This document shows, piece by piece, positions 485 through 50,520 of a stretch of 64,000 nt of DNA; the stretch's first letter is position 1; every line of letters starts with the position of its first letter. The position numbers were made by a program, and so were the translations under genes. The stretch is taken from the IMG/VR virus record IMGVR_UViG_3300031251_000001, positions 1-64,000 of that record. One strand, 5' to 3'. The notes beneath the pieces are model-generated. The model was given only the letters and a program-made list of their open reading frames with translations, was not told the origin of the DNA and searched no databases.

Positions 485-500
485 CAAAATACGTATTTTG
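485..500. promoter_or_regulatory. 16-bp palindrome CAAAATACGTATTTTG, copy 1 (putative operator)
   Basis: Exact palindrome, intergenic, 14 nt upstream of the ATG at 470. Confidence 0.75.
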
Positions 501-5076: not shown

Positions 5077-5166
5077 CCCGTAGATACCGACCTAATTAGT
5101 TGTGCCACCGCGCAACCACCAGGGTTGCACTTACTGGCTGTAGGCCTGTCGGAGACCTCCGAAGCT

Positions 5167-6490: not shown

Positions 6491-6530
6491 CCGTTCATGT
6501 GTTATGACGCAGATGTGACGCTAGTTTAGC
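6491..6530 (-). promoter_or_regulatory. putative phage promoter GCTAAA-N15-CGTCATAA (copy 1)
   Basis: 31/40 identical to 47324..47363; sigma28-like TAAA-N15-..ATAA geometry; intergenic and upstream of a gene. Confidence 0.6.
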
Positions 6531-15538: not shown

Positions 15539-15554
15539 CAAAATACGTATTTTG
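15539..15554. promoter_or_regulatory. 16-bp palindrome CAAAATACGTATTTTG, copy 2
   Basis: Exact; between a terminator and the SD of the recA-like gene (16 nt upstream of ATG). Confidence 0.75.
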
Positions 15555-20883: not shown

Positions 20884-21968
20884 GCTTCCATGCCTTCCAA
20901 AATACGTATTTTGGGTTTGAGCCCGAACTTCACCACCACGTCCTGTTTAGCGGCCTCTTGGATGATGTAAGGCCGCATGACCGACTTATCCAACTCGTCG
21001 GGATCGACTCCTTCAGGCAGACGAACAAAGGCTACCTGACCTGGTAGCTTCGTCCGTAGCTGCAGCGACAGCTTCTTGTGCTTGTCGGTGTCGAACTCAT
21101 CCGGATCCAGCAGATAGACCACACTGCCGTGCCGGAAGGCAACAGCAATCTGGCCGATCTGTGAATCGTTAAACTGGTGGCCCATCAGCGGGAAGGCCAT
21201 CGGACCGATGGCGAAGCGATCGTACCAACCCTCCACCATGATGCCCGTGTGGTACCTCCTGGCGATATGCAGGTTGAGTACCCCGGTCGAGTACGTCATG
21301 TCGGGACAGGTGAAATACTTGATCACGCCTTCACGCTTGAAGTCGATGTCGCCGACGAATCGTCCTTGCCAGCCGATGAGCCCAGTGGCATCACGGATGG
21401 GTACGATAATCCGGTGGAGAGCCGTGCGGAAGCGTGGGTTGGTGACAGCCACGCAGTAACTGACGCCGTGCCACTTGGAGAGCAGGTGCCCATCGACGTG
21501 TCGGCTGAGCAGGTAGGCATTGGCAGGGTGATGATAGGGTAGCTTGTGCAGCGGGGTACACACGCCGGGCATGGTAATGACCTTGGGCTCCGCTTTCCTG
21601 CCCTTGGCGACAGGCAAAGCAGCCAGCGACTTCGTCCCCATTTCGAGTCCCTGCGTGAACTCGTAAAGGTTCTGAGGATCGTCCAGGCAATCAGCGTTGA
21701 AGCAGTGGATGAGGAAGTTACCCTTCCGTCCATCACTCAGCATCTTGCCGAACATGTAGCTGACGTAGAGCCGTCGCTTGCGGTCAGGGCAGAAGGGGCA
21801 ATTGATGCGATAGAACTCGCCGCCTCGAACCTTGGCCAGCATGCGTTTGCCGGTGATAGGGTCGATGTAAGCAGGTCGATCGAACGCCTCACCCTCATGG
21901 TTGATCAGCACATCGTCGTACAGCTCCTTGAGCCGGTCGTAGAGTGCTGGATTCAGCGGATTGCTCAT
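20880..21968 (-). CDS. DNA primase (DnaG-like)
   Basis: Zinc finger CPFC...HCF..DC; RIIVPIRD..G..IGWQGR, KYF; TOPRIM VEGWYD, LDPD and LPEG.DP. Confidence 0.85.
   Translation of the reverse strand: MSNPLNPALYDRLKELYDDVLINHEGEAFDRPAYIDPITGKRMLAKVRGGEFYRINCPFCPDRKRRLYVSYMFGKMLSDGRKGNFLIHCFNADCLDDPQNLYEFTQGLEMGTKSLAALPVAKGRKAEPKVITMPGVCTPLHKLPYHHPANAYLLSRHVDGHLLSKWHGVSYCVAVTNPRFRTALHRIIVPIRDATGLIGWQGRFVGDIDFKREGVIKYFTCPDMTYSTGVLNLHIARRYHTGIMVEGWYDRFAIGPMAFPLMGHQFNDSQIGQIAVAFRHGSVVYLLDPDEFDTDKHKKLSLQLRTKLPGQVAFVRLPEGVDPDELDKSVMRPYIIQEAAKQDVVVKFGLKPKIRILEGMEA
20898..20913. promoter_or_regulatory. 16-bp palindrome CAAAATACGTATTTTG, copy 3
   Basis: Exact (extends to 18 bp); in the primase 3' end, 14 nt upstream of the DNA polymerase ATG. 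Confidence 0.75.
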
Positions 21969-23545
21969 ATACCGAGGTTGCTTCGTTGCTGAGGGTTCTG
22001 GGTTGGAATGTACTTGTCAGGGTTGTTGCTGCCTGCCTTACCGGCATCTTTGAGGGAGATGAAAGTACGGGTGCTCTCTTCAATGGTCATGTGGTCGGTG
22101 GCATCACTGAACTGGTAGAAGCTGCCGTCAAAGCGCACGATCAACCGAGGGCAGATCGGGCCGTGCCGGTTCTTGTCCGAGTACCAGGCACAGTAGCCAT
22201 CCTGGTTGACCTTGCCGCTGACCACGTTGATGTCGAGGTACATGCCGAACGACTTGCAGCCTTCCACGTCGGTACCGGCCATCGGGGCTCCCGGTGATCG
22301 CGAGTTGGCAGCACCGCTGAGCTGAGCCAGGAGTACCACGGGGACGTTGTACTTCTTGGCTACCTGAATACGCAGCTTACGCGGCAGATCACGCACTAAG
22401 TCGACACGATCGTCCTTGGTGTAGCGACCGTTGGAAGTCTCGATCACGTGATCCACCAGGGCACTGGTATGGTCGATCCATACCGAGTGGACGTAGGTGG
22501 TGTCGGTGTTGAGCAACCGGACGCAATTGGCGATCGTGGAAATCGACTGCACGGTGGCATGGTCGTTTTCCATGTTCGAGACGTCATAGAGCACGACGTT
22601 GTTGCTGATCGCTTTGGCTGCCGCCATGGCACGTCCCTTTTCGGAGATGTGCTTGGAGCCGGCGAACATCTTCTTCTCGTACTCCTGGGGCGGGTCGTTC
22701 TTCGTTCGCAGCCCCTCGAAGCCGACCTCCTGCAGGTACTTGGAGGGAATGCCGGCATAACAGCTGAGGAAGCGAAGGAGGAACTCCGACTTGGGGGTCT
22801 CGAAGGTGAAGATGGCAACGATCGGTTTGCGACCTTCAGCGTCCAGCTCCGCCGTCCTGGTGATCTGGCACGCGGCCCGTACCACTAGCGACGTCTTGCC
22901 ACCGCCGAAGGGGGCAGCAAAGCCAGCAACCCAACCACCGGCCATACCGCCGCCGAGGATGCGGTCGTAGACCTTGACCTCGGAAGAGCGACGGATAACC
23001 TTGGTGTTCTTCCACCACTCCCCGTCAAACATTTGTCCTGCTGCGGACAAAAGGGCCGGGGCCGAACGGGCTACCCGTTCGTTGATCTTGGCGAAGAAGT
23101 CAGGGATGTCTTCAGGTACCTGACCGATCTCACACTCCGCCTGGTAGGCCAGATAGATCGATTCCTCGACCATCCGCTTGCACAGGCTGATGCCCTTTTC
23201 GACGAGGTCGTCGGTGACTTTCATGCGATAGGCAACACGCACCAGTTCAACGGTCTCGTTGACCACATCCTCGGTGAAGACGCTAGGCATATCTTCCGCA
23301 GTCTCGCGCAGCGTCTGGATCAAAACATTGCGAGAGGGACGACTACCCAGAGCCAGAGCGTCACGGTAGAGACGCCACACCATGGCAAAGCCTGGGTTCC
23401 AACTAGCGATATCCTCGGGCTGGAGGGTATCAAGGAACTGCCTGGCGGCGGTCTCGGAAGCGAGCAACAGCTTGATGGCGTTGACCTTAGCGGTGCCGTT
23501 GAGGACCTTCCTTTTCTCCAGGTACTTTTCTTTGTCTGTGCCCAT
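21965..23545 (-). CDS. replicative DnaB-like helicase
   Basis: AAPFGGGKTS Walker A, FTFE, WIDH Walker B, LAQLS, KNRHG; adjacent to primase. Confidence 0.85.
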   Translation of the reverse strand: MGTDKEKYLEKRKVLNGTAKVNAIKLLLASETAARQFLDTLQPEDIASWNPGFAMVWRLYRDALALGSRPSRNVLIQTLRETAEDMPSVFTEDVVNETVELVRVAYRMKVTDDLVEKGISLCKRMVEESIYLAYQAECEIGQVPEDIPDFFAKINERVARSAPALLSAAGQMFDGEWWKNTKVIRRSSEVKVYDRILGGGMAGGWVAGFAAPFGGGKTSLVVRAACQITRTAELDAEGRKPIVAIFTFETPKSEFLLRFLSCYAGIPSKYLQEVGFEGLRTKNDPPQEYEKKMFAGSKHISEKGRAMAAAKAISNNVVLYDVSNMENDHATVQSISTIANCVRLLNTDTTYVHSVWIDHTSALVDHVIETSNGRYTKDDRVDLVRDLPRKLRIQVAKKYNVPVVLLAQLSGAANSRSPGAPMAGTDVEGCKSFGMYLDINVVSGKVNQDGYCAWYSDKNRHGPICPRLIVRFDGSFYQFSDATDHMTIEESTRTFISLKDAGKAGSNNPDKYIPTQNPQQRSNLGI

Positions 23546-23547
23546 AA

Positions 23548-24234
23548 TTACTGTCCTCCGTGCTTGAGAATCGTGGCTCGTAACAGCTCTGCATTCCTGA
23601 CGACGGCACTGGGAAGATACCCGGTGAGCAGAGCGTCATAGGTTGATTGGTTTGCCAGGTACTGGCAGGTCGCCAGTCGCAGTTTGAGGTCATACTCGTT
23701 CTCGTCAGCGATCTCATGCCGCAGACGCTCCAGCACCACGAGCTCGAACAGCGCCGGCAAATCTTCGGACTGCAGGTGCTGGATCGATAGCTGCTGCGTA
23801 GTGACGCGATGACAGAACAACACGACCTCGTGGGCGAGGAGGGCTGCGCGATGCTTGAACATAGCGGCGTAGTCGGTGTCCCGGTAGAGCTTCTCGATAC
23901 TCTTCTTCGTCAGCTCCTGGGGTGAAGCCAGGGAGCCGCAGAAGCCGTGCAGACTGGCGACGAAGAGGTAGTTCTCCGCCGGCCAATCCCTGAGCATGAG
24001 CCACCTCTCCAGTGAGGCAAAGTGGTTGGGCCGTTTACGATCCTCCACGTGCCGGGCCGGTCGGCCGTAGTAGACGCGGGGAGGAAGGTAGGCTTCAAAG
24101 CGTCCCGTGGAACGATGAATCGCCAAGCGCTGTCGAGCAACGTAAGGCACGAGCACGGACGCCCCCTTCGCTTCGTGTTCAACACGAGGCGGACGGGCGA
24201 CCAGTGGCGGGCCGAGACGGAAGAGCGACGTCAT
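23548..24234 (-). CDS. hypothetical protein (replication cluster)
   Basis: 228-aa ORF between the two helicases. Confidence 0.65.
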   Translation of the reverse strand: MTSLFRLGPPLVARPPRVEHEAKGASVLVPYVARQRLAIHRSTGRFEAYLPPRVYYGRPARHVEDRKRPNHFASLERWLMLRDWPAENYLFVASLHGFCGSLASPQELTKKSIEKLYRDTDYAAMFKHRAALLAHEVVLFCHRVTTQQLSIQHLQSEDLPALFELVVLERLRHEIADENEYDLKLRLATCQYLANQSTYDALLTGYLPSAVVRNAELLRATILKHGGQ

Positions 24235-25748
24235 TGGCCGTAGAACCTTTCGTATTGCTTGAGAGCGGGGTTATAGATGACCTGGTCGTAGCCCAGATCC
24301 TCGTACACCTTGAACCTCTTCCGTGCGTCCCGCTTGGCCTTGGAAGAGAAGGTGTCCCAGATGTCGTTATGAATCCCGTGCGTCTTGCCGGGCGACTTGC
24401 GCGTCAGACGACCGCTGACCTGATTGCAGCTCTCGTAAGAGACCACGCCGCTGGCGTAGACCGTCTCTTTGAGGAAGTCGAAAGAGACGCCGTAGTTCCA
24501 CACCAGATTAGCGATAGCGGCACGGCACTTGCCGGAGGTGAAATCATCGGTGACCTGCTTGATGCGGTCAAAGGTCATTTCTCCTTCTTCCGGCCCCAGC
24601 AAGCCGTGCTTCTCGTAGTAGCGGCGATCCGCTTCCTTGAGCTTCGTTTCCCCGTAGACCAGGGCGGTGCCGGGGCAATACTGGCGGACGTTCAGAGCGT
24701 GTTCGATGGTGGCAGTGGCAACGAAGACCTGATTGCCGTTACGGATGGCTTGCTTCAGGATGCGGGCTACCAGCTGGTTACGCAGATCATTAACCCAGTA
24801 GGTCTCACGCTTGTACTTCACGTCGTCCTTGATGCCGGCGGCGGGATCAACATCCATGCGGAAGCGGTGCCACACCACGACCACCGGGAGCACACGCCCT
24901 TTGGCTTCCGACTCCTTGAACGACTGCTTGAATCGCATGTCACCGAACATCTGCTGGCGACGATAGTTCTTGCCGTCGATTCGTTTGTCGAAGGTGGCAT
25001 CCAGTCCCCACATGATGCAGCGGTGGTACTGGGCCAGCCTCTCCATGTGCGAATCGGCCACGATGCGACGAGCCTCATCGACCAGCACCAGATCCACCTT
25101 CTCCTTGTCGATAGCGTCGAGGGAGTTGGCCGAGATCAGCATGACGCGGGCCTTGGGGTTGGTCTTCATGCCGCCGCCACGGACGCCAAAGTCGATCATC
25201 TTGGAGGAGAGCTCCGGGATGAGTCTCTGGCGGATGGTCGGTAGACCCACGACGATCACGTGGATACGCAGCTTCTTGAAGCCGGCACAGAGGGCACCGA
25301 TGATGTCACCCTTGCCCCACCCGGTCGGCAGGTTAGCCGTGCCGCCACGGTGGCGGTCAGCGATGATCATTTTGAGCAGGATGATCTGATCGGGATCGAG
25401 CGTGGGGTAGTAGCGGTTAACCCGTTCCCAATCAAAGATCCAACGGGTTGCATCAGCCGACCAGATGTAGCGCACATCAGGTTCATAGCCGTGCTTGATC
25501 AGGAAGTTCTTAACCGGGGTGAGGAACCCGGTGTCGGTGAGTATTCGCTGGTGACGGTCGACATGGAAGCACTGGACGAAAGTGTCTTCGCGGGTGTCCC
25601 ACCCCTGGGCCTGGGCAACACGTTTCTCGTAGCCCTGGAGGAACCGATGCTCGGTGAAGGTGAGCTTGGATCGGAGGAGGTCAGTGAGCTGCGGTGGAGA
25701 GTCGACCCGCATGCGGGTACCGTCCACGTAAATGGGAATTATCGCCAT
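24231..25748 (-). CDS. superfamily 2 helicase (UvsW-like)
   Basis: LPTGWGK motif I, LVDEAR motif II, GLDAT motif III, QVSGRLTR motif VI. Confidence 0.85.
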   Translation of the reverse strand: MAIIPIYVDGTRMRVDSPPQLTDLLRSKLTFTEHRFLQGYEKRVAQAQGWDTREDTFVQCFHVDRHQRILTDTGFLTPVKNFLIKHGYEPDVRYIWSADATRWIFDWERVNRYYPTLDPDQIILLKMIIADRHRGGTANLPTGWGKGDIIGALCAGFKKLRIHVIVVGLPTIRQRLIPELSSKMIDFGVRGGGMKTNPKARVMLISANSLDAIDKEKVDLVLVDEARRIVADSHMERLAQYHRCIMWGLDATFDKRIDGKNYRRQQMFGDMRFKQSFKESEAKGRVLPVVVVWHRFRMDVDPAAGIKDDVKYKRETYWVNDLRNQLVARILKQAIRNGNQVFVATATIEHALNVRQYCPGTALVYGETKLKEADRRYYEKHGLLGPEEGEMTFDRIKQVTDDFTSGKCRAAIANLVWNYGVSFDFLKETVYASGVVSYESCNQVSGRLTRKSPGKTHGIHNDIWDTFSSKAKRDARKRFKVYEDLGYDQVIYNPALKQYERFYGQ

Positions 25749-25846
25749 TCTCTTGCCTTTCCGGCATCATGGCGATAGACTTCCACTAGATGGATGGGCG
25801 TCTATCGCCGATATTGAGGGGCCGACAGTTAGCTGCTGTCGGCTCC
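25740..25846 (-). promoter_or_regulatory. structured 5' leader with kink-turn-like motif over the helicase start codon
   Basis: Alternative pairings: 25809-25800 with 25780-25771, or 25777-25769 with 25748-25740; an extra hairpin at 25818-25846. Confidence 0.45.
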
Positions 25847-25861
25847 TTGTGTTTTCAGATT

Positions 25862-26728
25862 CTACAAGGTTTCACACTGACGTGCAATGATCGAGTTGAA
25901 ATGCCTCTGTAAGGCCTGTTTTTCAGCCTCTCGCTGTACAAAGAACCCCGCTTTGTTGTTCAAAGTTGTATCAATCGTAACGTGATGCCAGTACGATACC
26001 AGCATCCGAATCCAAGTCTTAGTAGCGTTGACCACACCGTTCTTGCTGTACAGTGCGATTCGGTGCAAAAACGCATCCGGTCTTTTTAATTCTTCTTTAC
26101 TGAGTTGAGCACCAATCCCCCAGGAACGGTACGACAGCTTCGTGACGTCATCAATCAGCTTGCCCTCGCCGTAGCGGTGGGCCGAAACGCTGTTGATATC
26201 CAGCCACTGCGTCAGCCGGGTCCACTGACCCTTCGTGTCATCCGGATCAAGGAACCGCACCGGCGAGAGAATGTGACCCAGCAGTTTGCCCGTAGCGACC
26301 AGGTTGACTTTGTACGGGAAAGAGGCAAGCGGGTAGGTGATGTGCCGCTCCATGCGGAGCTCAATGGTCTCGTCGATCTCATCGGTGAGTGCCAGCCACC
26401 AGGTCGTAGGGTCGTCCCGTGGTGTCGAGCACTGTTTGTTATGCAGTGCCGCCGAGGAGTGTACAGCGAACAGGGACTTGAGTTTGATGAATCGGTCGCC
26501 CGAGGTGAGCACCGGGGCAAAGGCACGGTACGGGATGTTGGGCTTACACTGATTGATCTTCAGGTAAGGCAGGGCGTTGGCTGGCTCACAGTAAAAACGT
26601 ATGGAGCTGATCGAGTCGATCGGGATGGAGTTGAGCATCACGTCCACTGTCCCGCTGTGCGTCTCCTTCTCTTCGTCGGTACACCACGATCCGTTCCCAT
26701 CCCTGGTGAAGTGAAAGGCCAGCTGCAT
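25862..26728 (-). CDS. hypothetical protein, weak resemblance to the IS110 transposase C-terminal region
   Basis: SFP..VN....GKLLG.I..P.RF.DP......RL..WL echoes the Transposase_20 pattern; no DEDD domain seen. Confidence 0.5.
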   Translation of the reverse strand: MQLAFHFTRDGNGSWCTDEEKETHSGTVDVMLNSIPIDSISSIRFYCEPANALPYLKINQCKPNIPYRAFAPVLTSGDRFIKLKSLFAVHSSAALHNKQCSTPRDDPTTWWLALTDEIDETIELRMERHITYPLASFPYKVNLVATGKLLGHILSPVRFLDPDDTKGQWTRLTQWLDINSVSAHRYGEGKLIDDVTKLSYRSWGIGAQLSKEELKRPDAFLHRIALYSKNGVVNATKTWIRMLVSYWHHVTIDTTLNNKAGFFVQREAEKQALQRHFNSIIARQCETL

Positions 26729-26731
26729 GAT

Positions 26732-27358
26732 TCATCCTTGTTGCTGTCGTTCTCGAATCCTGTATCTCTCACGAAGCCTGACCAACAGTGAAGACATGAT
26801 CTGGGAAACACGCGATTCGGAGAGGTCCATCATTCTGCCGATCTCTTTCATAGTGACATCGTGCAGGTGATACAACCTCATGATCTCCCGTTCTCGTGGA
26901 TTGAGTCCAGCCAGGATCTCCTCCACCTGGTCACGTAAATCAACGTAGTAGAAACCAGCCACAGAGCGGTCAGCAAGCTCAGAGGCAAGATCAGTCTTCT
27001 TATAGTTAGCGGGAGCCTTGACGGCGTCGATCGATTGCAGACTCTCGGTGAAGTTCGGATCGGCGGCAATCCTTTTCTTTAGCTCCGTGCGACTGAACCG
27101 ACTACGTCGTCGCATGTAGTCCTGAATGCCGAAATGAGCGTGCATCGCCATGTAGCTCTTGAAGCTGCAATTGCGGTCAGGGTTATACCGTGGAGCATAG
27201 TCCAGCATGCGCATGTAGGCTTCGTTAGCGAGCTCATTGGCATCGTAGAGGTTGCCGAGCTTGTTCGCTGTAGCAGGACCAATCTCCTGAGCGATCTTCG
27301 TGATGATAGCAATCTGCTCAGCGGTCACTTCCACTTTCTGTTCTGGCTCGACATCCAT
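26732..27358 (-). CDS. RNA polymerase sigma factor, FliA/WhiG (sigma28)-like
   Basis: Region 2 YNPDRNCSFKSY.....FGIQDYMR; region 4 LNPREREIMRLY....TMKEIG..MDLSESRVSQI. Confidence 0.85.
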   Translation of the reverse strand: MDVEPEQKVEVTAEQIAIITKIAQEIGPATANKLGNLYDANELANEAYMRMLDYAPRYNPDRNCSFKSYMAMHAHFGIQDYMRRRSRFSRTELKKRIAADPNFTESLQSIDAVKAPANYKKTDLASELADRSVAGFYYVDLRDQVEEILAGLNPREREIMRLYHLHDVTMKEIGRMMDLSESRVSQIMSSLLVRLRERYRIRERQQQG

Positions 27359-28888: not shown

Positions 28889-31003
28889 TTACCCGATCTC
28901 AATGATCCGATCGAACGAAGGTTTGAGCAACGGATCATGGGTGATGACGATCATCTGCAGCCGATTGCGCAGCGACCGGGAGACAGCCTTCAGTACCTCA
29001 CCCAGGTAACGGCGATTCCGCTCATCCAGGTTGGCGGTCGGCTCATCCAGGACCAGCATGCCGATGTCACCGGCAAACAGTTCCAGCTGGGCCAGCCAGA
29101 AACAGATGGAGAGCACCACACGCTGACCGATCGACAGACGACTGATGGATCTCTCGCTCCGATCAGGCATGGAGATCATCAAATCGAGATCGTCGGTGGG
29201 TCGGCACGAGAAGCCGCCGCCGAAGCGTTTGATATTCCGGTTGATCGCCGGCTCGAGCTCCTTGAGGCAAGCACGCGAGACTCGTAGCGGCATGCGGGTG
29301 GGGTGCAGCAGCTCCGAGGCCTTCTCAATGACATCGATACGCTGCAGCATGACCAGGCTGTCTTCGATCTTCTTAGCGTTGGAAGCTAGCTCGGCCTGCT
29401 GCCGCTCCACCGACTCCTTGACCTGCTTGATCTTGCCCTTGAGCTCCGACGCCTTGGCACGCAGCCTGTCCTGGGCTTCCAGGTCAGCACTGCGGTCCTC
29501 GCCCGGTTTATCGATCTCGGTCAGAGTAGCTCGGCGAGCCCGATAGGTGGTGATCTGTTCCTTGAGCGAGGGAACAGCGGCCCGGTAGTCAGCCCTGGCG
29601 GCACGCAGCAGCTTCACCGTGGCATTACGCTTACGGATCTTGATGCGGGCCTGCTCAATGCGTTTGATGCGTTCTGCCTTCTCGGTGAGCTCCGGCTGCT
29701 CCACTGCCTTGCCCAGCGTTGCCTTGGCGCCGGCGATCTTGCTGGTCAGGTTGGCCTTCTCGGTGGTGGCAGCGTCGAATGCTTCCTTCTTGGCCTTGAG
29801 GTCCTTGGCCTTGGCCCGCAAGTCGAGCAGCTGGGCGTCGTAGGTATCCCGCTGCTTGCTCTTGTCGGTGATCATCTTCTGGATGTCATCAATAGCCTGG
29901 TTGCAGGTAGGGCACTTGGATTTACCCTTGAACTTGGCCATCGACTCAATCCAGGCGTGCAGCTCATCACGCTTGCCGGCGAGCACCTTACCATCGGTAG
30001 TGATCTTGAGCCACTCCTCCTGATCAAAGGGTTTGATCACGATGGTCTTGAGCTTGGACTCGTCAGCATCGATCTTGTTCTTCTTGGCCTTGTACTCGGC
30101 GTACTTGGCGATGTCGATCGCATATTGACGGATGGCCTGCAGATCAGCAGCGGCAACGGCCACGTACTTCTTGGTTGCTGCCAGATCCACCCGCCACTGC
30201 GCCTCACCCGTGAGTACCTTCTTGGCTGTCTCGATCTTCTCCCGTGACTCTTTCCCGCGTTTGGCGATCTTCTTGATGTCAGCGATAATTGAGTTACGCT
30301 GAGCCACCAGAGCCACCGAGTCACGCAGAACCTCATACTCTTCGTTAGTCAGGCACTGCACGAGGATGGCGTCGCGTTGTGTCTCGATCTCGACACGTTC
30401 CGCCCTGAGACGTTCGATCTCGGCGTTGATCTCGCCGCTCTTGTCTTGCACCGTGAGCTGAGTCTTCTTGAAGCCGGCGAAGATCCCCAGCGTCTTCTTG
30501 GCCAGAGCCAGGTCACCGAGCATCAACATTTTCTGGTAAACGGTTGCTCGGTCAGTGGACGTCGCGGAGAACAGAGCGTCGATTGCATTCTGTCGGAGAA
30601 AGACGGCATTAAGAACATCGGATGAGATCCCGAGGGATTCCATCCGTGCTTTAACTCCATCCCAACCCTCGACGTACTTCCCATCCGCTCCAGTGATGGT
30701 GATCTTGTCAGGGCGGATCGAATTGAGAAGGTGAACCTGTTGCTCGGCATGCTGAAAGGTGATGTCGACATAAGCCTTGTCCTTCTCCTTGGCCTTGTCC
30801 CGGATCACCTTCTTCTTGGTGTCGGCGATGCCGGTCCAGCGGTTAGTCATAGCGGAAACGATCGCTTCAGTCAGCGTCGTCTTGCCGCAGCCGTTCGGGC
30901 CGAAGATCCCGATGGTACCACGAGGAAGAGGATTCTTCTCGGTACCAAAGTGGATCTCCTTGTGCGGCCCGATATTGAAAAGTGTAGCGTACTTTAGGTA
31001 CAT
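28889..31003 (-). CDS. sbcC: SbcC/Rad50-like SMC-family ATPase
   Basis: GPNGCGKTT Walker A, coiled coils, CPTC zinc hook, LSIGQR signature, LDEPTANLD Walker B, ITHD. Confidence 0.9.
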   Translation of the reverse strand: MYLKYATLFNIGPHKEIHFGTEKNPLPRGTIGIFGPNGCGKTTLTEAIVSAMTNRWTGIADTKKKVIRDKAKEKDKAYVDITFQHAEQQVHLLNSIRPDKITITGADGKYVEGWDGVKARMESLGISSDVLNAVFLRQNAIDALFSATSTDRATVYQKMLMLGDLALAKKTLGIFAGFKKTQLTVQDKSGEINAEIERLRAERVEIETQRDAILVQCLTNEEYEVLRDSVALVAQRNSIIADIKKIAKRGKESREKIETAKKVLTGEAQWRVDLAATKKYVAVAAADLQAIRQYAIDIAKYAEYKAKKNKIDADESKLKTIVIKPFDQEEWLKITTDGKVLAGKRDELHAWIESMAKFKGKSKCPTCNQAIDDIQKMITDKSKQRDTYDAQLLDLRAKAKDLKAKKEAFDAATTEKANLTSKIAGAKATLGKAVEQPELTEKAERIKRIEQARIKIRKRNATVKLLRAARADYRAAVPSLKEQITTYRARRATLTEIDKPGEDRSADLEAQDRLRAKASELKGKIKQVKESVERQQAELASNAKKIEDSLVMLQRIDVIEKASELLHPTRMPLRVSRACLKELEPAINRNIKRFGGGFSCRPTDDLDLMISMPDRSERSISRLSIGQRVVLSICFWLAQLELFAGDIGMLVLDEPTANLDERNRRYLGEVLKAVSRSLRNRLQMIVITHDPLLKPSFDRIIEIG

Positions 31004-32137: not shown

Positions 32138-32153
32138 CAAAATACGTATTTTG
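32138..32153. promoter_or_regulatory. 16-bp palindrome CAAAATACGTATTTTG, copy 4
   Basis: Exact (extends to 22 bp, 32135..32156); intergenic, 13 nt upstream of the sbcD ATG. Confidence 0.75.
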
Positions 32154-33677: not shown

Positions 33678-34023
33678 GGCGTGTTGTCCTGAGAGTTGTC
33701 GATTAAAGATGAGAATGACCGCTTGTAGTGACCCACAAAAAATCCAAAATACGGATTTTGAAATGGCTCTTTTTGGGCCTCTCTCTCATGAGTCTTTTCC
33801 GTGTTTTCACGGGGAATAATTCGATTATCCTACTATCTCACTATTGGTTCCTTACCCCACCGCCTATGACAATTTTGAACCATCAGCCCACACCCCGCCG
33901 TTTAGAAAGATAGACCCTGTATTATTACTACATAATAATACGAACACCTTCGTGCGTCCCCTTGGAAAGGGGGACGCACTCCGGTGTGTAACGTAATACC
34001 AAGACTAGGAAAGAAGAGACGAC
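33678..34023. other. AT-rich intergenic region with inverted repeats (candidate replication origin / control region)
   Basis: Longest non-coding gap in the window; GTATTATTA-CTACA-TAATAATAC (33919..33941), GTGCGTCCCC...GGGGACGCAC (33952..33979) and a one-mismatch palindrome copy. Confidence 0.4.
33745..33760. promoter_or_regulatory. palindrome variant CAAAATACGGATTTTG (1 mismatch), copy 5
   Basis: 15/16 match, in the AT-rich gap upstream of 32625..33677. Confidence 0.6.
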
Positions 34024-34417: not shown

Positions 34418-34433
34418 CAAAATACGTATTTTG
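34418..34433. promoter_or_regulatory. 16-bp palindrome CAAAATACGTATTTTG, copy 6
   Basis: Exact; intergenic, 19 nt upstream of the alpha-CTD-like gene ATG. Confidence 0.75.
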
Positions 34434-38569: not shown

Positions 38570-40345
38570 TTATTCCTCTACCTCAGATCGCACAGGATCG
38601 CGAGCCTCAGAGTCACCACCCAGACCCTCGCAGATGGTGGAGATCGTGGCAGGCGGGGGCAGGGGTGCGATCCACTGGCCTAAATTGTCCCTCTTCTTGA
38701 TCGGCGTAGGGTCGAATACAGGCATGTCGGATTCTGCCATTGTGGCAGGCCGATGGAAGAGGGTAGCGATCTCGAACAGCTCAGCCTTCAGCTTGCTGGA
38801 ATACTCGATGTTGATCTGGTACAGAGCGGCCAGGTTTCGGAGCCACAACCAACACTCTCCCTCGACCTCCTTGGCCGGCCCCTCGAAGGGGTAGGTCACG
38901 TCGCCGTGCACCAGGTGACCACGGTACCAAGCCTGGCCGCCACGGGTGAATAAAGCCGTGAAGCGAAGGTCAGCGTTGAGCACCGACCAGACGTCATTGG
39001 TCTGCTGCACGAACCATCCGGTGCGAGTCCGCAAAATACGTATTTTGCGATTGGCCAGGTAGACCGCCTGGGTGTTGTTTTGTTTCTCCTGCCGATCAAG
39101 GCAGCGACTCCACTTACCCTGCGACGGACTCTTGAGCTGCGAGGTGATGAGTTGCGGGTCGAAGTGGTTCAGACGCATGTGTCGGATCATCGCCGTGATC
39201 TCATCCGGAGCAGCGTTGGTGATCCACTTGTTCATCGCCGTCTGCCAGGTGCGCGTGCGGTGCGACAACCACTCAATGAGTTCCAGCGGCTCACGCTGCC
39301 GGACATAGGTCGAGAGGGTTTCGTAGTCTGTGCCGGAGTAACCCTTGGCACAGATGTGACCATCGGTCATCGCCGCCATGCAGACCATGTACCAGGTGAG
39401 CTTCGGTCCCCAGAACACGATCTTCTTGCCGCTGAGACTCTGCCAGGCTAAGGTAGTGCGTGCCTGATCATCCCAGTGCCAGCCCACCATAGGCACGAGT
39501 GCTTCGGAGTAGCGATGTTGAATCTTGCTGATGCGCGGAGCGATGAGGGGCTCATAGACAGCATAAACCGTACCCTCGCCGGACTTGATGCACTCCTCCA
39601 ACCCTGTCAAACCCCCTTCGGGGCGATCTTTGTCGCAGGGAACGTAATCCCGTACAACCCGGTCCTTATGCTTCGTGACCAGGTGAATGCCCGCCAGTTT
39701 GGTGAGCGACGACCAACTGGGGACCACTACGTAATACTTCGACTTGGGAATACGTAGCGGACGGTGGAGCAGCGGATAGAGCACAGCGGCAGAGACATAG
39801 CCATAGCGTTCACAGTGCTCATCCGCCGGCTTGTTGTAGTTCAAGTGGTGAATGATGCTGATCACTTCCTTGGGCATCTGCTCGGAGCGAAGGATCTTCT
39901 CGGCGCCGTGCCAGATCTCTTCCACGGTGTTGGGCTTGCTCTTGCCGATCGGTGAACCAGAGGGGAAGTGGGAGGCGAGTCGTTGCCTGGCTTCGTCACG
40001 GGAGCACTTCCAGCTGGCGGACGCCAGATCCACGACACTGCCGCTGAAATCACAGGATCGACATTCGACGGTGACGACGGACGTGGTACACTCACAGATA
40101 AGCAGGTCGAGCGTCTTGCAACGCGGGCACCAGATGGTTGCCGGCAAACAGGCGTCAGGCAATTCAAGCCCAATGGCTTTGGCGATGACAGACCAAGCCG
40201 ATCCCGACTTATAACTTTGGAGCGATCCCATGACGTTAGTTGACATTGCTAGTGACGTGTCCTTGTCCATGACGAAGCAGGTGCGAGATAAGTACGGCCT
40301 GCCTGGGTTCGTTAAAGGTGCAACTGATGATGATCTGCGGCACAC
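38570..40345 (-). CDS. hypothetical protein with N-terminal primase-type zinc finger
   Basis: CPRC...CRSCDFSGSVVDL resembles a CHC2-like zinc-binding domain; no intact TOPRIM motif; true start probably near 40270 or 40246. Confidence 0.6.
   Translation of the reverse strand: MCRRSSSVAPLTNPGRPYLSRTCFVMDKDTSLAMSTNVMGSLQSYKSGSAWSVIAKAIGLELPDACLPATIWCPRCKTLDLLICECTTSVVTVECRSCDFSGSVVDLASASWKCSRDEARQRLASHFPSGSPIGKSKPNTVEEIWHGAEKILRSEQMPKEVISIIHHLNYNKPADEHCERYGYVSAAVLYPLLHRPLRIPKSKYYVVVPSWSSLTKLAGIHLVTKHKDRVVRDYVPCDKDRPEGGLTGLEECIKSGEGTVYAVYEPLIAPRISKIQHRYSEALVPMVGWHWDDQARTTLAWQSLSGKKIVFWGPKLTWYMVCMAAMTDGHICAKGYSGTDYETLSTYVRQREPLELIEWLSHRTRTWQTAMNKWITNAAPDEITAMIRHMRLNHFDPQLITSQLKSPSQGKWSRCLDRQEKQNNTQAVYLANRKIRILRTRTGWFVQQTNDVWSVLNADLRFTALFTRGGQAWYRGHLVHGDVTYPFEGPAKEVEGECWLWLRNLAALYQINIEYSSKLKAELFEIATLFHRPATMAESDMPVFDPTPIKKRDNLGQWIAPLPPPATISTICEGLGGDSEARDPVRSEVEE
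39032..39047. promoter_or_regulatory. 16-bp palindrome CAAAATACGTATTTTG, copy 7 (intragenic)
   Basis: Exact (extends to 20 bp); encodes KIRIL within 38570..40345. Confidence 0.7.
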
Positions 40346-47323: not shown

Positions 47324-47363
47324 CCGTTCATCTCTTATGACGCAAATCCGGCTCCAATTTAGC
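47324..47363 (-). promoter_or_regulatory. putative phage promoter GCTAAA-N15-CGTCATAA (copy 2)
   Basis: 31/40 identical to 6491..6530 with identical spacing. Confidence 0.6.
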
Positions 47364-48416: not shown

Positions 48417-50520
48417 CGGTCACGGTTCCCTTCTTAGCTAGAGCGACGATAGCCTTCTGGACAAAGGCATCATAGGGGTGCTTCCAGTGTGGGTTAAGGT
48501 GATAGGTTCCAGTGGGCAGCGCAGCGGTGCCGGCCTCTACGTACTTGGCGTTCAAGTCGGCTGACGAGGAGGCGTGGTAGGCGCTAACGCCCCAGCGGTA
48601 AATGTATTGCCAGGCAGACGGCTCCAGGGCGGGTCGCAACACCGGGAGACCCAGACGGGCGACCTTCTCCATGAAGATCTTATCGTAGTCCCCCGTGGTT
48701 GGCTCAATGAGCCGGTGCTCGACTGCCACACTCCGCTTGAAGACCGATGTCATCAGGCCGTATCCGAAGTTCTTGGGATCAACAATCCCCTCGTAGGTTG
48801 TCTCGCCCTTCACACCGACTGGCCAGAACCAGTAGCGCTGTGAGTTGTACATGAAGCAGGTGGGGTCTTTCTGAAGGGCACTCATGGCCTGGTCCAGTCG
48901 ACCGGGGAGGCTGATATCATCGTCGTCCCAGACAGCCACGTATTCCTCAGCCATCGACATGCCGATGGCGAACTTCTCTCCCAGGGAGAGGCAGCGTTTG
49001 GGCAGGTTAATGATCTGGACGTTATGGGCTCCGCATTTCAGCTCCGAGCCGCGAGCATCGTTGATGATGATCAGTTCCTTGTGTGGCCACGATTGCAGCA
49101 GGAACGACTGAATCGACTCTTCCAGGAGTCGCTGATACTTGGTGCCGGCCCGCCCGAAGGTCATGCAGATGGCGGTGACCTTGGGTGGGATCTGGGGAGC
49201 AGCGGAGAGGGCCACGGGGTGAGCGGAGAGCTTGGCCAAGGGTTTCTTCTCCGGAGGTTTAGGAGGAGGTGGGGGCAGAGTCTGCGTCTCGGTATAGGTG
49301 GTGGTCGAGGTTTGAGTGTCACACTCGGTGCTGGTCTCAGCAGAGGCCGTGGCTACTATGGCCGCTGGTATGTGCTGCACCATGTGATCGATTGCTTCTT
49401 TGCTGATTGATGCAAGGAACTGAGCATCATTTTCTACATCTACCGATTTCCTGAAGTTGAGATCTGCGCTCTCGCGAAGATCAGGGATTCCAAAATACGT
49501 ATTTTGCGGCGGGTGAATCACCGGCAGGATGCTGTTGTGCTGATCGTAGCCGTCGACGTTGGCGAAGTTGATGAACTTCTTGTCCTGGCGAACGATGATC
49601 TCTTTCTTCTGCACCGCCGAGTACATGACCAGATCGTTGCCTTCGTCGGGCTTGGGCAGGTCGGGGTAGACCTTGCGAGCAGCAGCAAGCGCCTCTTCAA
49701 TGTCGTCCTCGCTTTGCCCTTTATGGTCACGGAAATGGATGAGCACGTCATCCCATCGAAGGCCGAGCTCCACGCGGCCAATGATGTAGTTAGCCATCAT
49801 CCGCCAGGCCGGTGACTCAAAACCTTTACCGCGAATATGGGTGAAGCGGTGTTGCCATTTCAGACCCTTGATGCAGACACAGCGACCGCCACGCTGTCGT
49901 ACTTTGGCGTGGGTGTAGACTTCTTCACCGCCGAAGTTCCGGAAGTTGTCGTTGAAACCGACCCAGTCTTTGGTACGCATGCCGAACAGGCCCATGCCGT
50001 GGGCCGGAATCTCCAGCCACTTATCCTCCTGGAAGGTCGTGTGCCAGGTCCCCAGCATGACGTCAGTGCCCCACTGCGGCTCCATGTGGGTAGCCAGCAC
50101 CTGTTCGGTGTCGTCGTAGCAGAGCGGGCCGTGCAGCAGATCCTTGTTATCCGGGAAGGTCTCGATGTACTCGTGGATCGCCTCGCAGGCCCCAGGGTGC
50201 AGGATGACGTGGGAGTCCACGCACAGGGTGTAGTCTGAGGCTGATTCCTGAAAGACCAGGTTACGGGGCCTGGCTGTGCCATCTTGCTTGGAATGGATGT
50301 AGCGGACGTTCATGCCGGGCGTGTCCCGCATCATCTTGTTGCAGAGTTCAAAGTTGAGTTGGGCTTCGGCGGGTCGCTTGGTGTTGTCGATCACCAGGAG
50401 CTGGTCCACCCACTTCTTCTGGAATAATCGTGTCGTAGTGAGCGTAGCCCAGAGGCCGTCGTAATCTGTGTGGACAGCCATGCCCACCGTGAGCGTATTC
50501 TTCCGCATTGTCGACTCCAT
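48397..50520 (-). CDS. two-domain GT-A glycosyltransferase: polypeptide GalNAc-transferase-like domain plus GT2 domain
   Basis: Domain 1: ARPRN, CVDSHV (DxH), P.HGMGLFGM, GF...F..FGGEE.....KV...GG...C......WQH.F. Domain 2: KVTAIC.T, Q.....ELIIIND, WDDDD.S.P.RL. Thr/Pro-rich linker between them. Confidence 0.85.
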   Translation of the reverse strand: MESTMRKNTLTVGMAVHTDYDGLWATLTTTRLFQKKWVDQLLVIDNTKRPAEAQLNFELCNKMMRDTPGMNVRYIHSKQDGTARPRNLVFQESASDYTLCVDSHVILHPGACEAIHEYIETFPDNKDLLHGPLCYDDTEQVLATHMEPQWGTDVMLGTWHTTFQEDKWLEIPAHGMGLFGMRTKDWVGFNDNFRNFGGEEVYTHAKVRQRGGRCVCIKGLKWQHRFTHIRGKGFESPAWRMMANYIIGRVELGLRWDDVLIHFRDHKGQSEDDIEEALAAARKVYPDLPKPDEGNDLVMYSAVQKKEIIVRQDKKFINFANVDGYDQHNSILPVIHPPQNTYFGIPDLRESADLNFRKSVDVENDAQFLASISKEAIDHMVQHIPAAIVATASAETSTECDTQTSTTTYTETQTLPPPPPKPPEKKPLAKLSAHPVALSAAPQIPPKVTAICMTFGRAGTKYQRLLEESIQSFLLQSWPHKELIIINDARGSELKCGAHNVQIINLPKRCLSLGEKFAIGMSMAEEYVAVWDDDDISLPGRLDQAMSALQKDPTCFMYNSQRYWFWPVGVKGETTYEGIVDPKNFGYGLMTSVFKRSVAVEHRLIEPTTGDYDKIFMEKVARLGLPVLRPALEPSAWQYIYRWGVSAYHASSSADLNAKYVEAGTAALPTGTYHLNPHWKHPYDAFVQKAIVALAKKGTVTDVIEYV
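49491..49506. promoter_or_regulatory. 16-bp palindrome CAAAATACGTATTTTG, copy 8 (intragenic)
   Basis: Exact; encodes QNTYF in the glycosyltransferase interdomain linker. Confidence 0.7.

What the first reader, a model, noticed from the sequence alone, without database searches (positions are those of the whole stretch)
25740..25846. Two-state RNA switch with a canonical kink-turn pattern burying the SF2 helicase start codon
Seen on the mRNA: UAUCGCCAU-GA-UGCC-GGAAA-GGCA-AGA-GA-AUGGCGAUA. The first and last 9 nt are perfectly complementary and the last include the AUG. The interior fits the k-turn consensus (C-stem, 3-nt bulge, tandem G-A/A-G pairs, NC-stem). The same 5' strand can instead pair over 10 bp with GGCGAUAGAC upstream (25809-25800), which would free the start codon; a further hairpin lies at 25818-25846. 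Inference: a translational switch, possibly sensing an L7Ae-family protein or autoregulated by the helicase.
Basis: partly seen in the sequence, partly recalled or inferred. Interest (0 to 1): 0.6.

Follow-up and report, generated by a model that had tools for sequence, protein, structure and literature searches.

The report
Two-state helicase leader, not a kink-turn
The 113-base gap before a helicase gene of an uncultivated soil jumbo phage can fold to hide or expose the start codon. It also carries a backward-facing terminator that hints at a small antisense RNA, while the kink-turn resemblance is lost in the nearest relative.

Summary
The sequence observation is correct and far from chance. 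Segment 2 (25780-25769) can pair either with the start-codon segment (25748-25740, 9 bp) or with an upstream copy (25809-25800, 10 bp). No such pair of helices arose in 20,000 simulated leaders. The leader is the best-conserved stretch of the locus: 76% identity to the only close relative, against 49% and 64% for the flanking genes. Codons 2-3 use rare codons that keep the pairing.

The kink-turn reading fails. In the relative, the GA of the non-bulged strand is UC and forms ordinary pairs with the ribosome-binding region. The phage has no L7Ae-family gene.

At equilibrium the full leader is open (closed state +5.0 kcal/mol here, +2.5 in the relative). It closes only when segment 1 is absent or masked.

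The "further hairpin" (25815-25849) behaves as an intrinsic terminator on the opposite strand. It is about 8 kcal/mol more stable there, has a conserved T-tract, and is the only such site between co-directional genes in 214 kb.

My best model is a translational sequestor/anti-sequestor leader, probably flipped by a roughly 70-nt cis-antisense RNA that masks segment 1, as in plasmid pSK41 RNAI. No RNA data exist and there are only three lineages, so this remains inference.

The parts
24231..25748 (-). SF2-type DNA helicase gene (505 aa). Start AUG at 25748-25746; codons 2-3 are GCG-ATA (rare codons).
   Evidence: ORF list. Pfam ResIII and PHROG DNA helicase. N-terminus MAI invariant in the three homologues. 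Codon usage.
25740..25748 (-). Segment 3: AUGGCGAUA (start codon plus codons 2-3). It is the 3' arm of the closing helix (state B).
   Evidence: Identical in L002. Not complementary in L006, which has ATGGCCATC.
25749..25768 (-). Interior of the closing hairpin: GA / UGCC-GGAAA-GGCA / AGAGA. It holds the weak Shine-Dalgarno-like AAGG and AAGAGA.
   Evidence: The 3' half (AAAGGCAAGAG) is conserved in L002. The 5' half is the least conserved part of the leader and in L002 forms Watson-Crick UCUU:AAGA.
25769..25780 (-). Segment 2: GUCUAUCGCCAU, the shared strand. Positions 25780-25771 pair with segment 1 (state A, open). Positions 25777-25769 pair with segment 3 (state B, closed).
25781..25799 (-). 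Apical part of stem A. The sequence AUCUAGUGG (25791-25783) is conserved in L002, but the upper-stem pairing is not. On the + strand this block lies at the predicted start of the antisense RNA.
25800..25809 (-). Segment 1: GGCGAUAGAC, the anti-sequestor. When free it forms the small hairpin GGCG-AUAGA-CGCC.
   Evidence: L002 has A to G here, giving G.U. L006 has GGCGACA: UGUCGCC, a U-A to C-G double change.
25815..25849 (+). Hairpin 1, read on the + strand (antisense to the helicase): 14-15 pairs and terminator-like.
   Evidence: Flagged as terminator-like on the antisense strand in W and in L002. Energies are -26.2 against -18.3 kcal/mol (W) and -24.7 against -16.5 (L002), antisense against sense. 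Two double compensatory changes between W and L002. It is the only strong antisense-facing site between two - strand genes in 214 kb.
25850..25861 (+). T-tract after hairpin 1 on the + strand (TGTTTTCAGATT). On the mRNA it reads AAUCUGAAAACA, directly after the upstream stop codon.
   Evidence: Ten bases (AATCTGAAAA) are identical in L002.
25753..25781 (+). Weak sigma-70-like promoter candidate on the + strand: TTGCCT (25753-25758), 17 nt spacer, TAGACT (25776-25781). The predicted start is near 25788, giving an RNA of about 70 nt ending near 25857.
   Evidence: Own scan, 8 of 12 matches. The same hexamers and the same 17-nt spacing occur in L002 although the spacer sequence differs. It is below the tool's 9 of 12 threshold, and such matches occur 0.72 per kb per strand. 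This is inference only.
25862..26728 (-). Upstream 288-aa ORF of unknown function. Its stop codon (25864-25862) lies 53 nt before segment 1.

Best explanation
The 113-nt gap before the helicase gene is a conserved post-transcriptional control region of a jumbo-phage replication operon.

On the mRNA, segment 2 can pair with the start-codon segment. This closing hairpin (state B) buries the AUG and the weak ribosome-binding site. Segment 2 can instead pair with the upstream segment 1 (state A), which leaves the start region open.

State A is the more stable one and is also transcribed first, so read-through transcripts of the operon are translatable by default. The leader closes when segment 1 is masked or missing.

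The most likely masking agent is a small cis-antisense RNA. It would be made from the opposite strand, start near 25788 and end at the backward-facing terminator (25815-25857). It is complementary to segment 1 and hairpin 1, so binding would free segment 2 to lock the start codon. That would throttle helicase synthesis, as the RNAI countertranscript does for Rep of plasmid pSK41. 5' processing that removes segment 1 would have the same effect.

The kink-turn look of the internal loop is a by-product of the purine-rich ribosome-binding region. It is not a conserved feature.

Shown: the helices, their exclusivity, their conservation, and the strand asymmetry of hairpin 1. Inferred: that translation is controlled, that an antisense RNA exists, and where it starts.
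For: - Helices and energies: state A is the MFE. State B costs +5.0 kcal/mol (W) and +2.5 (L002). An RNA lacking segment 1 folds into state B (-23.5 and -24.8).
- Non-randomness: 0 of 20,000 simulations gave two helices sharing an arm. The local start-region fold ranks 2nd of 257.
- Conservation: the leader is 76% identical to L002, against 49% (upstream gene) and 64% (helicase), with a peak of 82% over 25830-25771.
- Pairing is kept through A-U to G.U changes in both helices. In L002 the diverged 5' strand gains UCUU:AAGA pairs with the RBS.
- L006 shows a U-A to C-G double change in the 1:2 stem.
- Rare codons GCG-ATA are retained.
- Hairpin 1 is terminator-like only on the antisense strand in W and L002. 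It is about 8 kcal/mol more stable there and has a conserved T-tract.
- It is the only strong site of that orientation between co-directional genes. The 12 sense-facing terminator-like sites between - strand genes all passed the scan's T-rich-tail filter.
- The TTGCCT-17-TAGACT candidate promoter is kept in L002 with constant spacing.
- The genes of the operon are otherwise packed with 0-3 nt gaps or overlaps. This is the only sizeable gap, both here and in L002.
- Precedent: the pSK41 RNAI mechanism (PMC5703833) and SR4/bsrG (PMC3834814).
Against: - No RNA data: no RNA run holds the sequence. The DNA runs showed only identical or near-identical copies.
- Only three lineages exist, so the covariation evidence rests on a handful of substitutions.
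- The third lineage (L006, 42% aa identity) keeps a 1:2-type stem and a structured start region. It lacks the 2:3 complementarity and has no clear antisense terminator.
- The antisense promoter is only an 8 of 12 match. That is expected by chance about once per 1.4 kb per strand (roughly 8% for this position). Its hexamers also overlap blocks conserved for other reasons.
- All Watson-Crick covariation is strand-neutral and could equally reflect DNA palindromes.
- The host is unknown, so promoter and terminator rules are assumed.
Confidence: 0.42

Rival explanations
1. Static structured leader with no switching. Stem 1:2 and hairpin 1 are mRNA processing or stability elements (for example an RNase III-type site or protective hairpins) in a polycistronic phage transcript. 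The weak, partly structured start region simply keeps helicase translation low. The 2:3 complementarity is rarely populated and has no regulatory role.
For: - State A is favoured by 2.5-5 kcal/mol and forms first during transcription, so state B is under 2% at equilibrium.
- L006 keeps the long stem and a structured start region without 2:3 pairing.
- The apical sequence AUCUAGUGG is conserved without a conserved structure, as expected for a protein or nuclease recognition site.
Against: - Rare codons GCG-ATA are retained in two lineages while neighbouring third positions vary.
- The diverged 5' strand of L002 increases complementarity to the RBS.
- Two 9-10 bp helices sharing an arm never arose in 20,000 simulations.
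- It does not explain the antisense-strand terminator.
Confidence: 0.22
2. The functional product is a + strand small RNA that ends at hairpin 1 and acts mainly in trans, or by direct duplex formation and RNase cleavage of the helicase mRNA. Leader conservation then reflects that RNA and its promoter, not a two-state mRNA fold.
For: - Strand asymmetry and uniqueness of the terminator.
- The conserved T-tract and the conserved block from the -10 candidate to the terminator.
Against: - The G.U-preserving changes in stems 1:2 and 2:3 fit the sense strand and would be C.A mismatches on the antisense strand. In L002, stems A and B are 3-5 kcal/mol more stable on the sense strand.
- Segment 3 and the rare codons lie outside the shortest predicted antisense RNA.
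Confidence: 0.15
3. DNA-level element. The three 9-10 bp copies in alternating orientation are binding sites for a phage DNA-binding protein (operator, iterons of a replication origin next to the helicase and DnaB genes), or they are part of a promoter for the phage sigma factor encoded two genes upstream.
For: - Three copies lie about 29 and 31 bp apart (about three helical turns) next to replication genes.
- Watson-Crick covariation is equally expected for co-evolving half-sites.
- The phage has its own sigma factor.
Against: - Half-sites 20-30 bp apart are unusual for dimeric binders.
- The motif occurs nowhere else in the window as a cluster.
- There is no AT-rich region and no GC-skew turning point here.
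- Changes are wobble-compatible on defined strands.
- No sigma-70-like promoter is found on the sense strand.
- The phage's recurrent intergenic motifs are different sequences.
Confidence: 0.1
4. One reading: the internal loop is a genuine kink-turn bound by an L7Ae-family protein (or by the helicase), and binding stabilises the closed state to repress translation.
For: - In this phage the loop fits the pattern exactly: a 4-bp C-stem, 3-nt bulge AGA, G.A/A.G, then a 9-bp NC-stem.
- L7Ae regulates translation through 5'UTR k-turns in archaea (PMC5539422).
Against: - The G.A/A.G pairs are replaced by Watson-Crick pairs in L002 and the C-stem register shifts.
- This is the least conserved part of the leader.
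- 3b.3n is A-U, a class that does not fold in metal ions alone (PMC4382518).
- The phage has no PF01248 gene, and there is no Rfam match.
- The bulged-strand purines are explained by the ribosome-binding region.
Confidence: 0.03

Closest known systems
pSK41 RNAI / rep leader (staphylococcal RepA_N plasmids; Kwong et al., as reviewed in PMC5703833)
   Same: [quoted passage not shown] Binding is proposed to induce a stem-loop that sequesters the ribosome-binding site of a replication gene. Here, masking segment 1 gives the start-codon-burying hairpin in silico, and a terminator for the countertranscript sits in the leader.
   Different: The setting is a phage operon, not a plasmid. The target is an SF2 helicase, not an initiator. 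The antisense RNA is only predicted and there is no sequence similarity. The predicted RNA is about 70 nt, with one small 5' hairpin plus the terminator.
Phage lambda cIII mRNA alternative structures (from my own knowledge; no paper was read here)
   Same: A phage gene whose start region exists in two alternative folds, one occluding the SD and AUG and one exposing them, with a trans factor shifting the balance.
   Different: In lambda the alternative pairings involve the coding region and RNase III binding. Here an upstream anti-sequestor and possibly an antisense RNA are involved.
[quoted passage not shown]
   Same: Antisense RNA binding at a distance from the SD causes refolding that extends the helix sequestering the SD and inhibits translation.
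   Different: SR4 pairs with the 3' part of the mRNA, and the system is a toxin-antitoxin pair, not a replication gene leader.
Kink-turn / L7Ae translational operators (archaeal L7Ae 5'UTR, PMC5539422; k-turn rules, PMC4382518)
   Same: The sequence pattern C-stem, 3-nt bulge, G.A/A.G, NC-stem lies next to a start codon in this one phage.
   Different: The pattern is not conserved in the closest relative. The 3b.3n pair is Watson-Crick. The phage has no L7Ae-family gene. The resemblance is best explained by the purine-rich RBS.

Membership tests
Kink-turn (k-turn) RNA motif | C-stem, three-nucleotide bulge, tandem sheared G.A / A.G pairs, then NC-stem (sequence pattern) | tested here: met
   In W the non-bulged strand reads ...CAU-GA-UGCC and the bulged strand reads GGCA-AGA-GA-AUGG. 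This is a pattern match only.
Kink-turn (k-turn) RNA motif | G.A / A.G pairs conserved in homologous RNAs | tested here: not met
   In L002 the GA becomes UC and the bulged-strand GA loses a base. UCUU:AAGA forms Watson-Crick pairs, and 3 of 4 C-stem pairs are broken column for column.
Kink-turn (k-turn) RNA motif | 3b.3n pair of a type that allows ion-induced folding (3n = G or 3b = C; PMC4382518) | tested here: not met
   3b.3n is A-U Watson-Crick. By the published rule such a k-turn does not fold in metal ions alone.
Kink-turn (k-turn) RNA motif | Cognate L7Ae/YbxF-family binding protein available | tested here: inconclusive
   PF01248 has no match in the 214-kb phage genome at E <= 1, while the control genomes were positive. 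The host is unknown, so a host protein cannot be excluded.
Kink-turn (k-turn) RNA motif | Kinked three-dimensional geometry with A-minor contacts | not testable with these tools
   This needs FRET, a crystal structure or probing.
Sequestor / anti-sequestor translational leader | Start codon and/or SD base-paired in one conformer | tested here: met
   The 9-bp helix covers AUG plus codons 2-3, and the RBS is enclosed. The local fold ranks 2nd of 257 starts.
Sequestor / anti-sequestor translational leader | Mutually exclusive alternative helix that uses the sequestor strand | tested here: met
   Segment 2 is shared by the 10-bp and the 9-bp helix. This arose in 0 of 20,000 simulations.
Sequestor / anti-sequestor translational leader | Both helices conserved with pairing-preserving changes in relatives | tested here: inconclusive
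   Both are kept in L002, with one G.U change each. The 1:2 stem is kept in L006 with one double change, but 2:3 is absent there. Only three lineages exist.
Sequestor / anti-sequestor translational leader | Conformers differ in translation output | not testable with these tools
   This needs reporter fusions or toeprinting.
Cis-antisense (countertranscript) RNA control | Intrinsic terminator on the strand opposite the target leader | tested here: met
   Seen. The hairpin is 8 kcal/mol more stable on the antisense strand in W and L002. It is unique in orientation among intergenic sites of the genome. It was not found in L006.
Cis-antisense (countertranscript) RNA control | Promoter on the opposite strand upstream of that terminator | tested here: inconclusive
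   TTGCCT-17-TAGACT is an 8 of 12 match, conserved with the same spacing in L002. It is below the tool's threshold, with a chance density of 0.72 per kb per strand.
Cis-antisense (countertranscript) RNA control | Antisense transcript detected | not testable with these tools
   No RNA run holds the stretch. Only DNA contigs could be laid.
Sense-strand intrinsic terminator (hairpin 1) | GC-rich hairpin followed by a U-tract on the gene's own strand | tested here: not met
   The sense tail is CCCUCAAUAUC and was not flagged on the - strand. Twelve terminator-like hairpins with T-rich tails were found on the sense strand between - strand genes elsewhere in the genome, while hairpin 1 has such a tail only on the + strand.
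Any Rfam family | Covariance-model match | tested here: not met
   No match at gathering score in the 64-kb window. Only chance-level hits (E >= 1) in 25650-25950.

The most novel reading that the evidence does not exclude
A jumbo phage times or limits synthesis of its replication helicase with a roughly 70-nt cis-antisense RNA. That RNA does not cover the ribosome-binding site. It masks an upstream anti-sequestor, so that the mRNA itself refolds and locks the start codon. This is plasmid-style countertranscript copy-control logic placed inside a phage replication operon.
Probability: 0.3. Interest if true: 0.55.

Novelty: new member of a known kind. Interest (0 to 1): 0.4.

Why it matters
Post-transcriptional control in uncultivated jumbo phages is almost unexplored, and this phage lineage has no relatives among sequenced isolates. 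If the model holds, it would show countertranscript-driven refolding of a leader inside a phage replication operon. That mechanism is best known from plasmid copy-number control.

It would also give a compact element of about 110 nt (a sequestor, an anti-sequestor and an antisense trigger) that could be tested and reused as a riboregulator.

The negative result also matters. A perfect kink-turn pattern next to a start codon can arise from a purine-rich ribosome-binding region, so it should not be called without conservation of the G.A pairs.

Tried and rejected
- Known RNA families: nothing at Rfam gathering score in the window. Only chance hits in a sensitive local scan.
- Kink-turn / L7Ae: rejected for the reasons given above.
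- More homologous leaders:
  - phage isolates by DNA and protein: none useful;
  - IMG/VR by protein, by alignment and by three DNA patterns: only chance matches;
  - metagenome contigs: only the L002 lineage plus relatives at 23-29% identity with unrelated leaders;
  - genome contigs: none;
  - word search with the whole protein, with its N-terminal 200 aa and with P0003: three lineages only;
  - exhaustive HMMER search: scores drop from 921 to 316 bits after the two known relatives;
  - all six L002-type contigs have identical leaders.
- Reads: no RNA runs. DNA contigs of three further rhizosphere samples carry the same phage with an identical leader where covered, so they gave no variation.
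- Leader-peptide attenuation: W has an AUGAUG-initiated 29-codon frame overlapping the start. L002 has a 20-codon frame across segments 1-2. Neither is conserved in the other lineage, so this was rejected.
- Coupling to the upstream ORF: its stop codon is 53 nt before segment 1, too far for a terminating ribosome to open the stems.
- Sense-strand sigma-70 promoter inside the gap: none found.
- GGCGATAG as a dispersed genomic motif: no other cluster in the window.
- CTAGTGG and GCTAAC words: the latter are mostly stop-codon contexts and are not a motif.
- Replication origin: no AT-rich stretch and no skew inflection.
Full report
**Context.** The window is the first 64 kb of a 214,229-bp IMG/VR virus record from a rhizosphere metagenome, rated 100% complete. 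GC content is about 58%. The finding lies in a long block of - strand genes:
- SbcC-like ATPase, 28889-31003
- sigma factor, 26732-27358
- ORF of unknown function (288 aa), 25862-26728
- SF2/ResIII-type helicase, 24231-25748
- 228-aa ORF, 23548-24234
- DnaB-like helicase, 21965-23545

The sigma-factor, 288-aa, helicase, 228-aa and DnaB ORFs are packed with overlaps or gaps of 2-3 nt. The 113-nt gap at 25749-25861 is the only sizeable gap among them. The same holds in the closest relative. No sequenced phage isolate is related.

**Checking the observation.**
- The 42-nt piece folds exactly as proposed: -18.7 kcal/mol, z = -5.25.
- The whole leader is strongly structured: z = -4.86.
The small UGCC/GGCA hairpin is kept and the AUG is not held by segment 2.
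- Constrained folding puts the closed state 5.0 kcal/mol above the open one. An RNA that begins after segment 1 folds into the closed state.
- Two perfect 9-10 bp helices sharing one arm did not occur in 20,000 first-order Markov simulations of the leader.
- Among 257 predicted starts of the genome, this start region is the second most stably folded. It ties for the longest perfect stem over a start codon.

**Relatives.** Exhaustive and word-based protein searches find only two related helicase lineages:
- P0002, 60% identity, on six contigs from two JGI metagenomes and two ENA assemblies, all with identical leaders;
- P0003, 42% identity, on one MAG contig.

The next hits score a third as many bits and have unrelated upstream regions. 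Covariation evidence is therefore thin by necessity.

**W against L002.**
- The leader is 76% identical, with a peak of 82% over 25830-25771. The upstream gene is 49% identical and the helicase gene 64%. The gap is therefore under stronger constraint than the proteins around it.
- All three segments are kept.
- Within the helices the only changes are A to G in segment 1 and A to G at the 3' end of segment 2. Each turns an A-U pair into G.U on the sense strand.
- Codons 2-3 are GCG-ATA in both, although ATA is 4.6% of Ile codons and GCG 14.8% of Ala codons in this phage. Third positions of the following codons differ.
- The closed state is only 2.5 kcal/mol above the open one in L002.

**The kink-turn.** In W the loop fits the pattern with the correct strand polarity:
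- -1b.-1n is A-U;
- L1-L3 is AGA;
- the tandem pairs are G1b.A1n and A2b.G2n;
- 3b.3n is A-U.

Against this:
- The 5' strand of that loop is the least conserved part of the leader.
- In L002 the non-bulged GA is UC, the bulged GA loses a base, and UCUU pairs with AAGA of the ribosome-binding region. The hairpin becomes a nearly continuous 16-bp stem with two single-base bulges.
- Column for column, three of the four C-stem pairs are broken.
- A Watson-Crick 3b.3n pair belongs to the class that does not fold in metal ions alone (PMC4382518).
- The phage encodes no L7Ae-family protein.
- Rfam gives nothing.

What is conserved is sequestration of the start region, not a kink. The purines of the bulged strand are simply the weak Shine-Dalgarno region (AAGG ... 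AAGAGA). Other genes of this phage use AAGGAG-type sites.

**L006.** The 222-nt gap has:
- a GC-rich hairpin;
- a 9-bp stem CCGGCGACA : UGUCGCCGG, which shares the GGCGAYA / URUCGCC core with W through a U-A to C-G double change;
- a UUUCCC:GGGAAA hairpin over the RBS region;
- a 5-bp hairpin holding the AUG.

Its start is ATGGCCATC (preferred codons) and is not complementary to segment 2. The long upstream stem and a structured start region are thus shared by all three lineages. The switch geometry is shared by only two.

**Hairpin 1.**
- The terminator scan flags it only on the strand antisense to the helicase, in W and independently in L002. It is the top-ranked site in a 12-kb scan.
- Folded from that strand it has 14 continuous pairs: -26.2 kcal/mol in W and -24.7 in L002. 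On the sense strand it scores -18.3 and -16.5, because G.U pairs become C.A mismatches.
- It is followed by TGTTTTCAGA on that strand. Ten bases of that tract are identical in L002.
- W and L002 differ by two double compensatory changes in the stem.
- In a genome-wide scan, 12 terminator-like hairpins between - strand genes face the sense direction, each with the T-rich tail the scan requires. Hairpin 1 is the only strong one facing backwards, and there is no + strand gene nearby for it to serve.

This argues that a + strand transcript ends at about 25857.

**Where might that transcript start?** A candidate start is defined by TTGCCT (25753-25758), a 17-nt spacer and TAGACT (25776-25781). The hexamers and the spacing are identical in L002 although the spacer sequence has diverged. 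This is only an 8 of 12 match, with a chance density of 0.72 per kb per strand. It also overlaps the RBS and segment 2, so it is weak evidence. It would give an RNA of about 70 nt complementary to hairpin 1, segment 1 and the conserved AUCUAGUGG block.

Both that RNA and the freed segment 1 of the mRNA can form complementary 4-bp hairpins with 5-nt loops (GGCG-UCUAU-CGCC and GGCG-AUAGA-CGCC). That geometry is typical of loop-loop initiation, which I state from general knowledge.

**Model.** Read-through operon transcripts fold into the open state and are translated. The nearest copy of the phage's recurrent 16-bp palindromic motif upstream on this strand is at 32138-32153. An antisense RNA, or 5' processing, that removes segment 1 from play lets segment 2 lock the AUG and RBS. 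The three informative wobble substitutions agree with this division of labour: stems A and B fit the sense strand, and hairpin 1 fits the antisense strand. Three substitutions are a small sample. The closest precedent is pSK41 RNAI, which binds the rep leader upstream of the initiation region and induces an RBS-sequestering stem-loop (PMC5703833). SR4/bsrG is a second example of antisense-induced SD sequestration (PMC3834814).

**Uncertainty.**
- There are no RNA data, and the DNA reads gave no variants.
- The host is unknown.
- L006 lacks the switch.
- Rivals are a static processing or stability leader, a trans-acting + strand sRNA, and DNA-level binding sites.

I rate the combined model at about 0.4, the existence of some + strand transcript ending here at about 0.5-0.6, and the kink-turn reading at about 0.03.

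**Verdict.** This is a new member of a known kind of control (a structured leader with a sequestor and anti-sequestor, probably antisense-driven), found in a novel jumbo phage. Interest is moderate.

Noticed in passing
window 485-500, 15539-15554, 20898-20913, 32138-32153, 33745-33760, 34418-34433, 39032-39047, 49491-49506 (and 15 more outside the window in G000): The perfect 16-bp palindrome CAAAATACGTATTTTG occurs 23 times in the 214-kb phage (22 perfect copies and one with a mismatch). It usually lies 10-30 nt upstream of a Shine-Dalgarno plus ATG of a - strand gene. It is a candidate phage-specific promoter or operator. The helicase lies inside the unit between the copies at 32138 and 20913.
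   Followed up: partly
window 6491-6511 and 47324-47344 (also G000 84077, 113662, 161398), - strand: A second recurrent intergenic motif, TGCGTCATAA-N4-TGAACGG, has five copies upstream of - strand genes. It may be a second promoter class, for example for the phage sigma factor.
   Followed up: no
window about 5100-5150 (- strand); further copies near G000 122640, 147040, 177990, 182330, 183240, 186330, 202780, 207890, 208860, 213845: A repeated element of about 60 nt has the conserved blocks GGCCTACAGC, CCTGGTGG and GGCACAACG. There are about 11 copies, all on the - strand and mostly intergenic, with hairpin potential. It has no Rfam match in the window copy. It could be an unrecognised structured RNA family of this phage.
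   Followed up: no
window 26732-27358 (-) and 28889-31003 (-): A phage-encoded sigma-70-family factor (regions 2 and 4) and an SbcC-like ATPase sit just upstream of the helicase. The L006 relative carries an SbcC-like ATPase at the corresponding position. The lineage has no relatives among 50,697 phage records.
   Followed up: partly
window 25770-25681 (-) and L002:2386-2448: Short non-conserved reading frames lie in the leaders. W has AUGAUG followed by a 29-codon frame overlapping the helicase start out of frame. L002 has a 20-codon frame running across segments 1 and 2. Neither exists in the other lineage, so a leader-peptide mechanism is unlikely.
   Followed up: yes
L006:4795-4812: The longer gap of the distant relative contains TTGGTACAAT, an extended -10-like sequence, upstream of its hairpin. 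A promoter inside that gap is possible, but the consensus scan did not flag it.
   Followed up: no
G000 about 178,700-178,790 (outside the window): An intergenic region looks like a tRNA gene by eye. It was not checked with ARAGORN.
   Followed up: no
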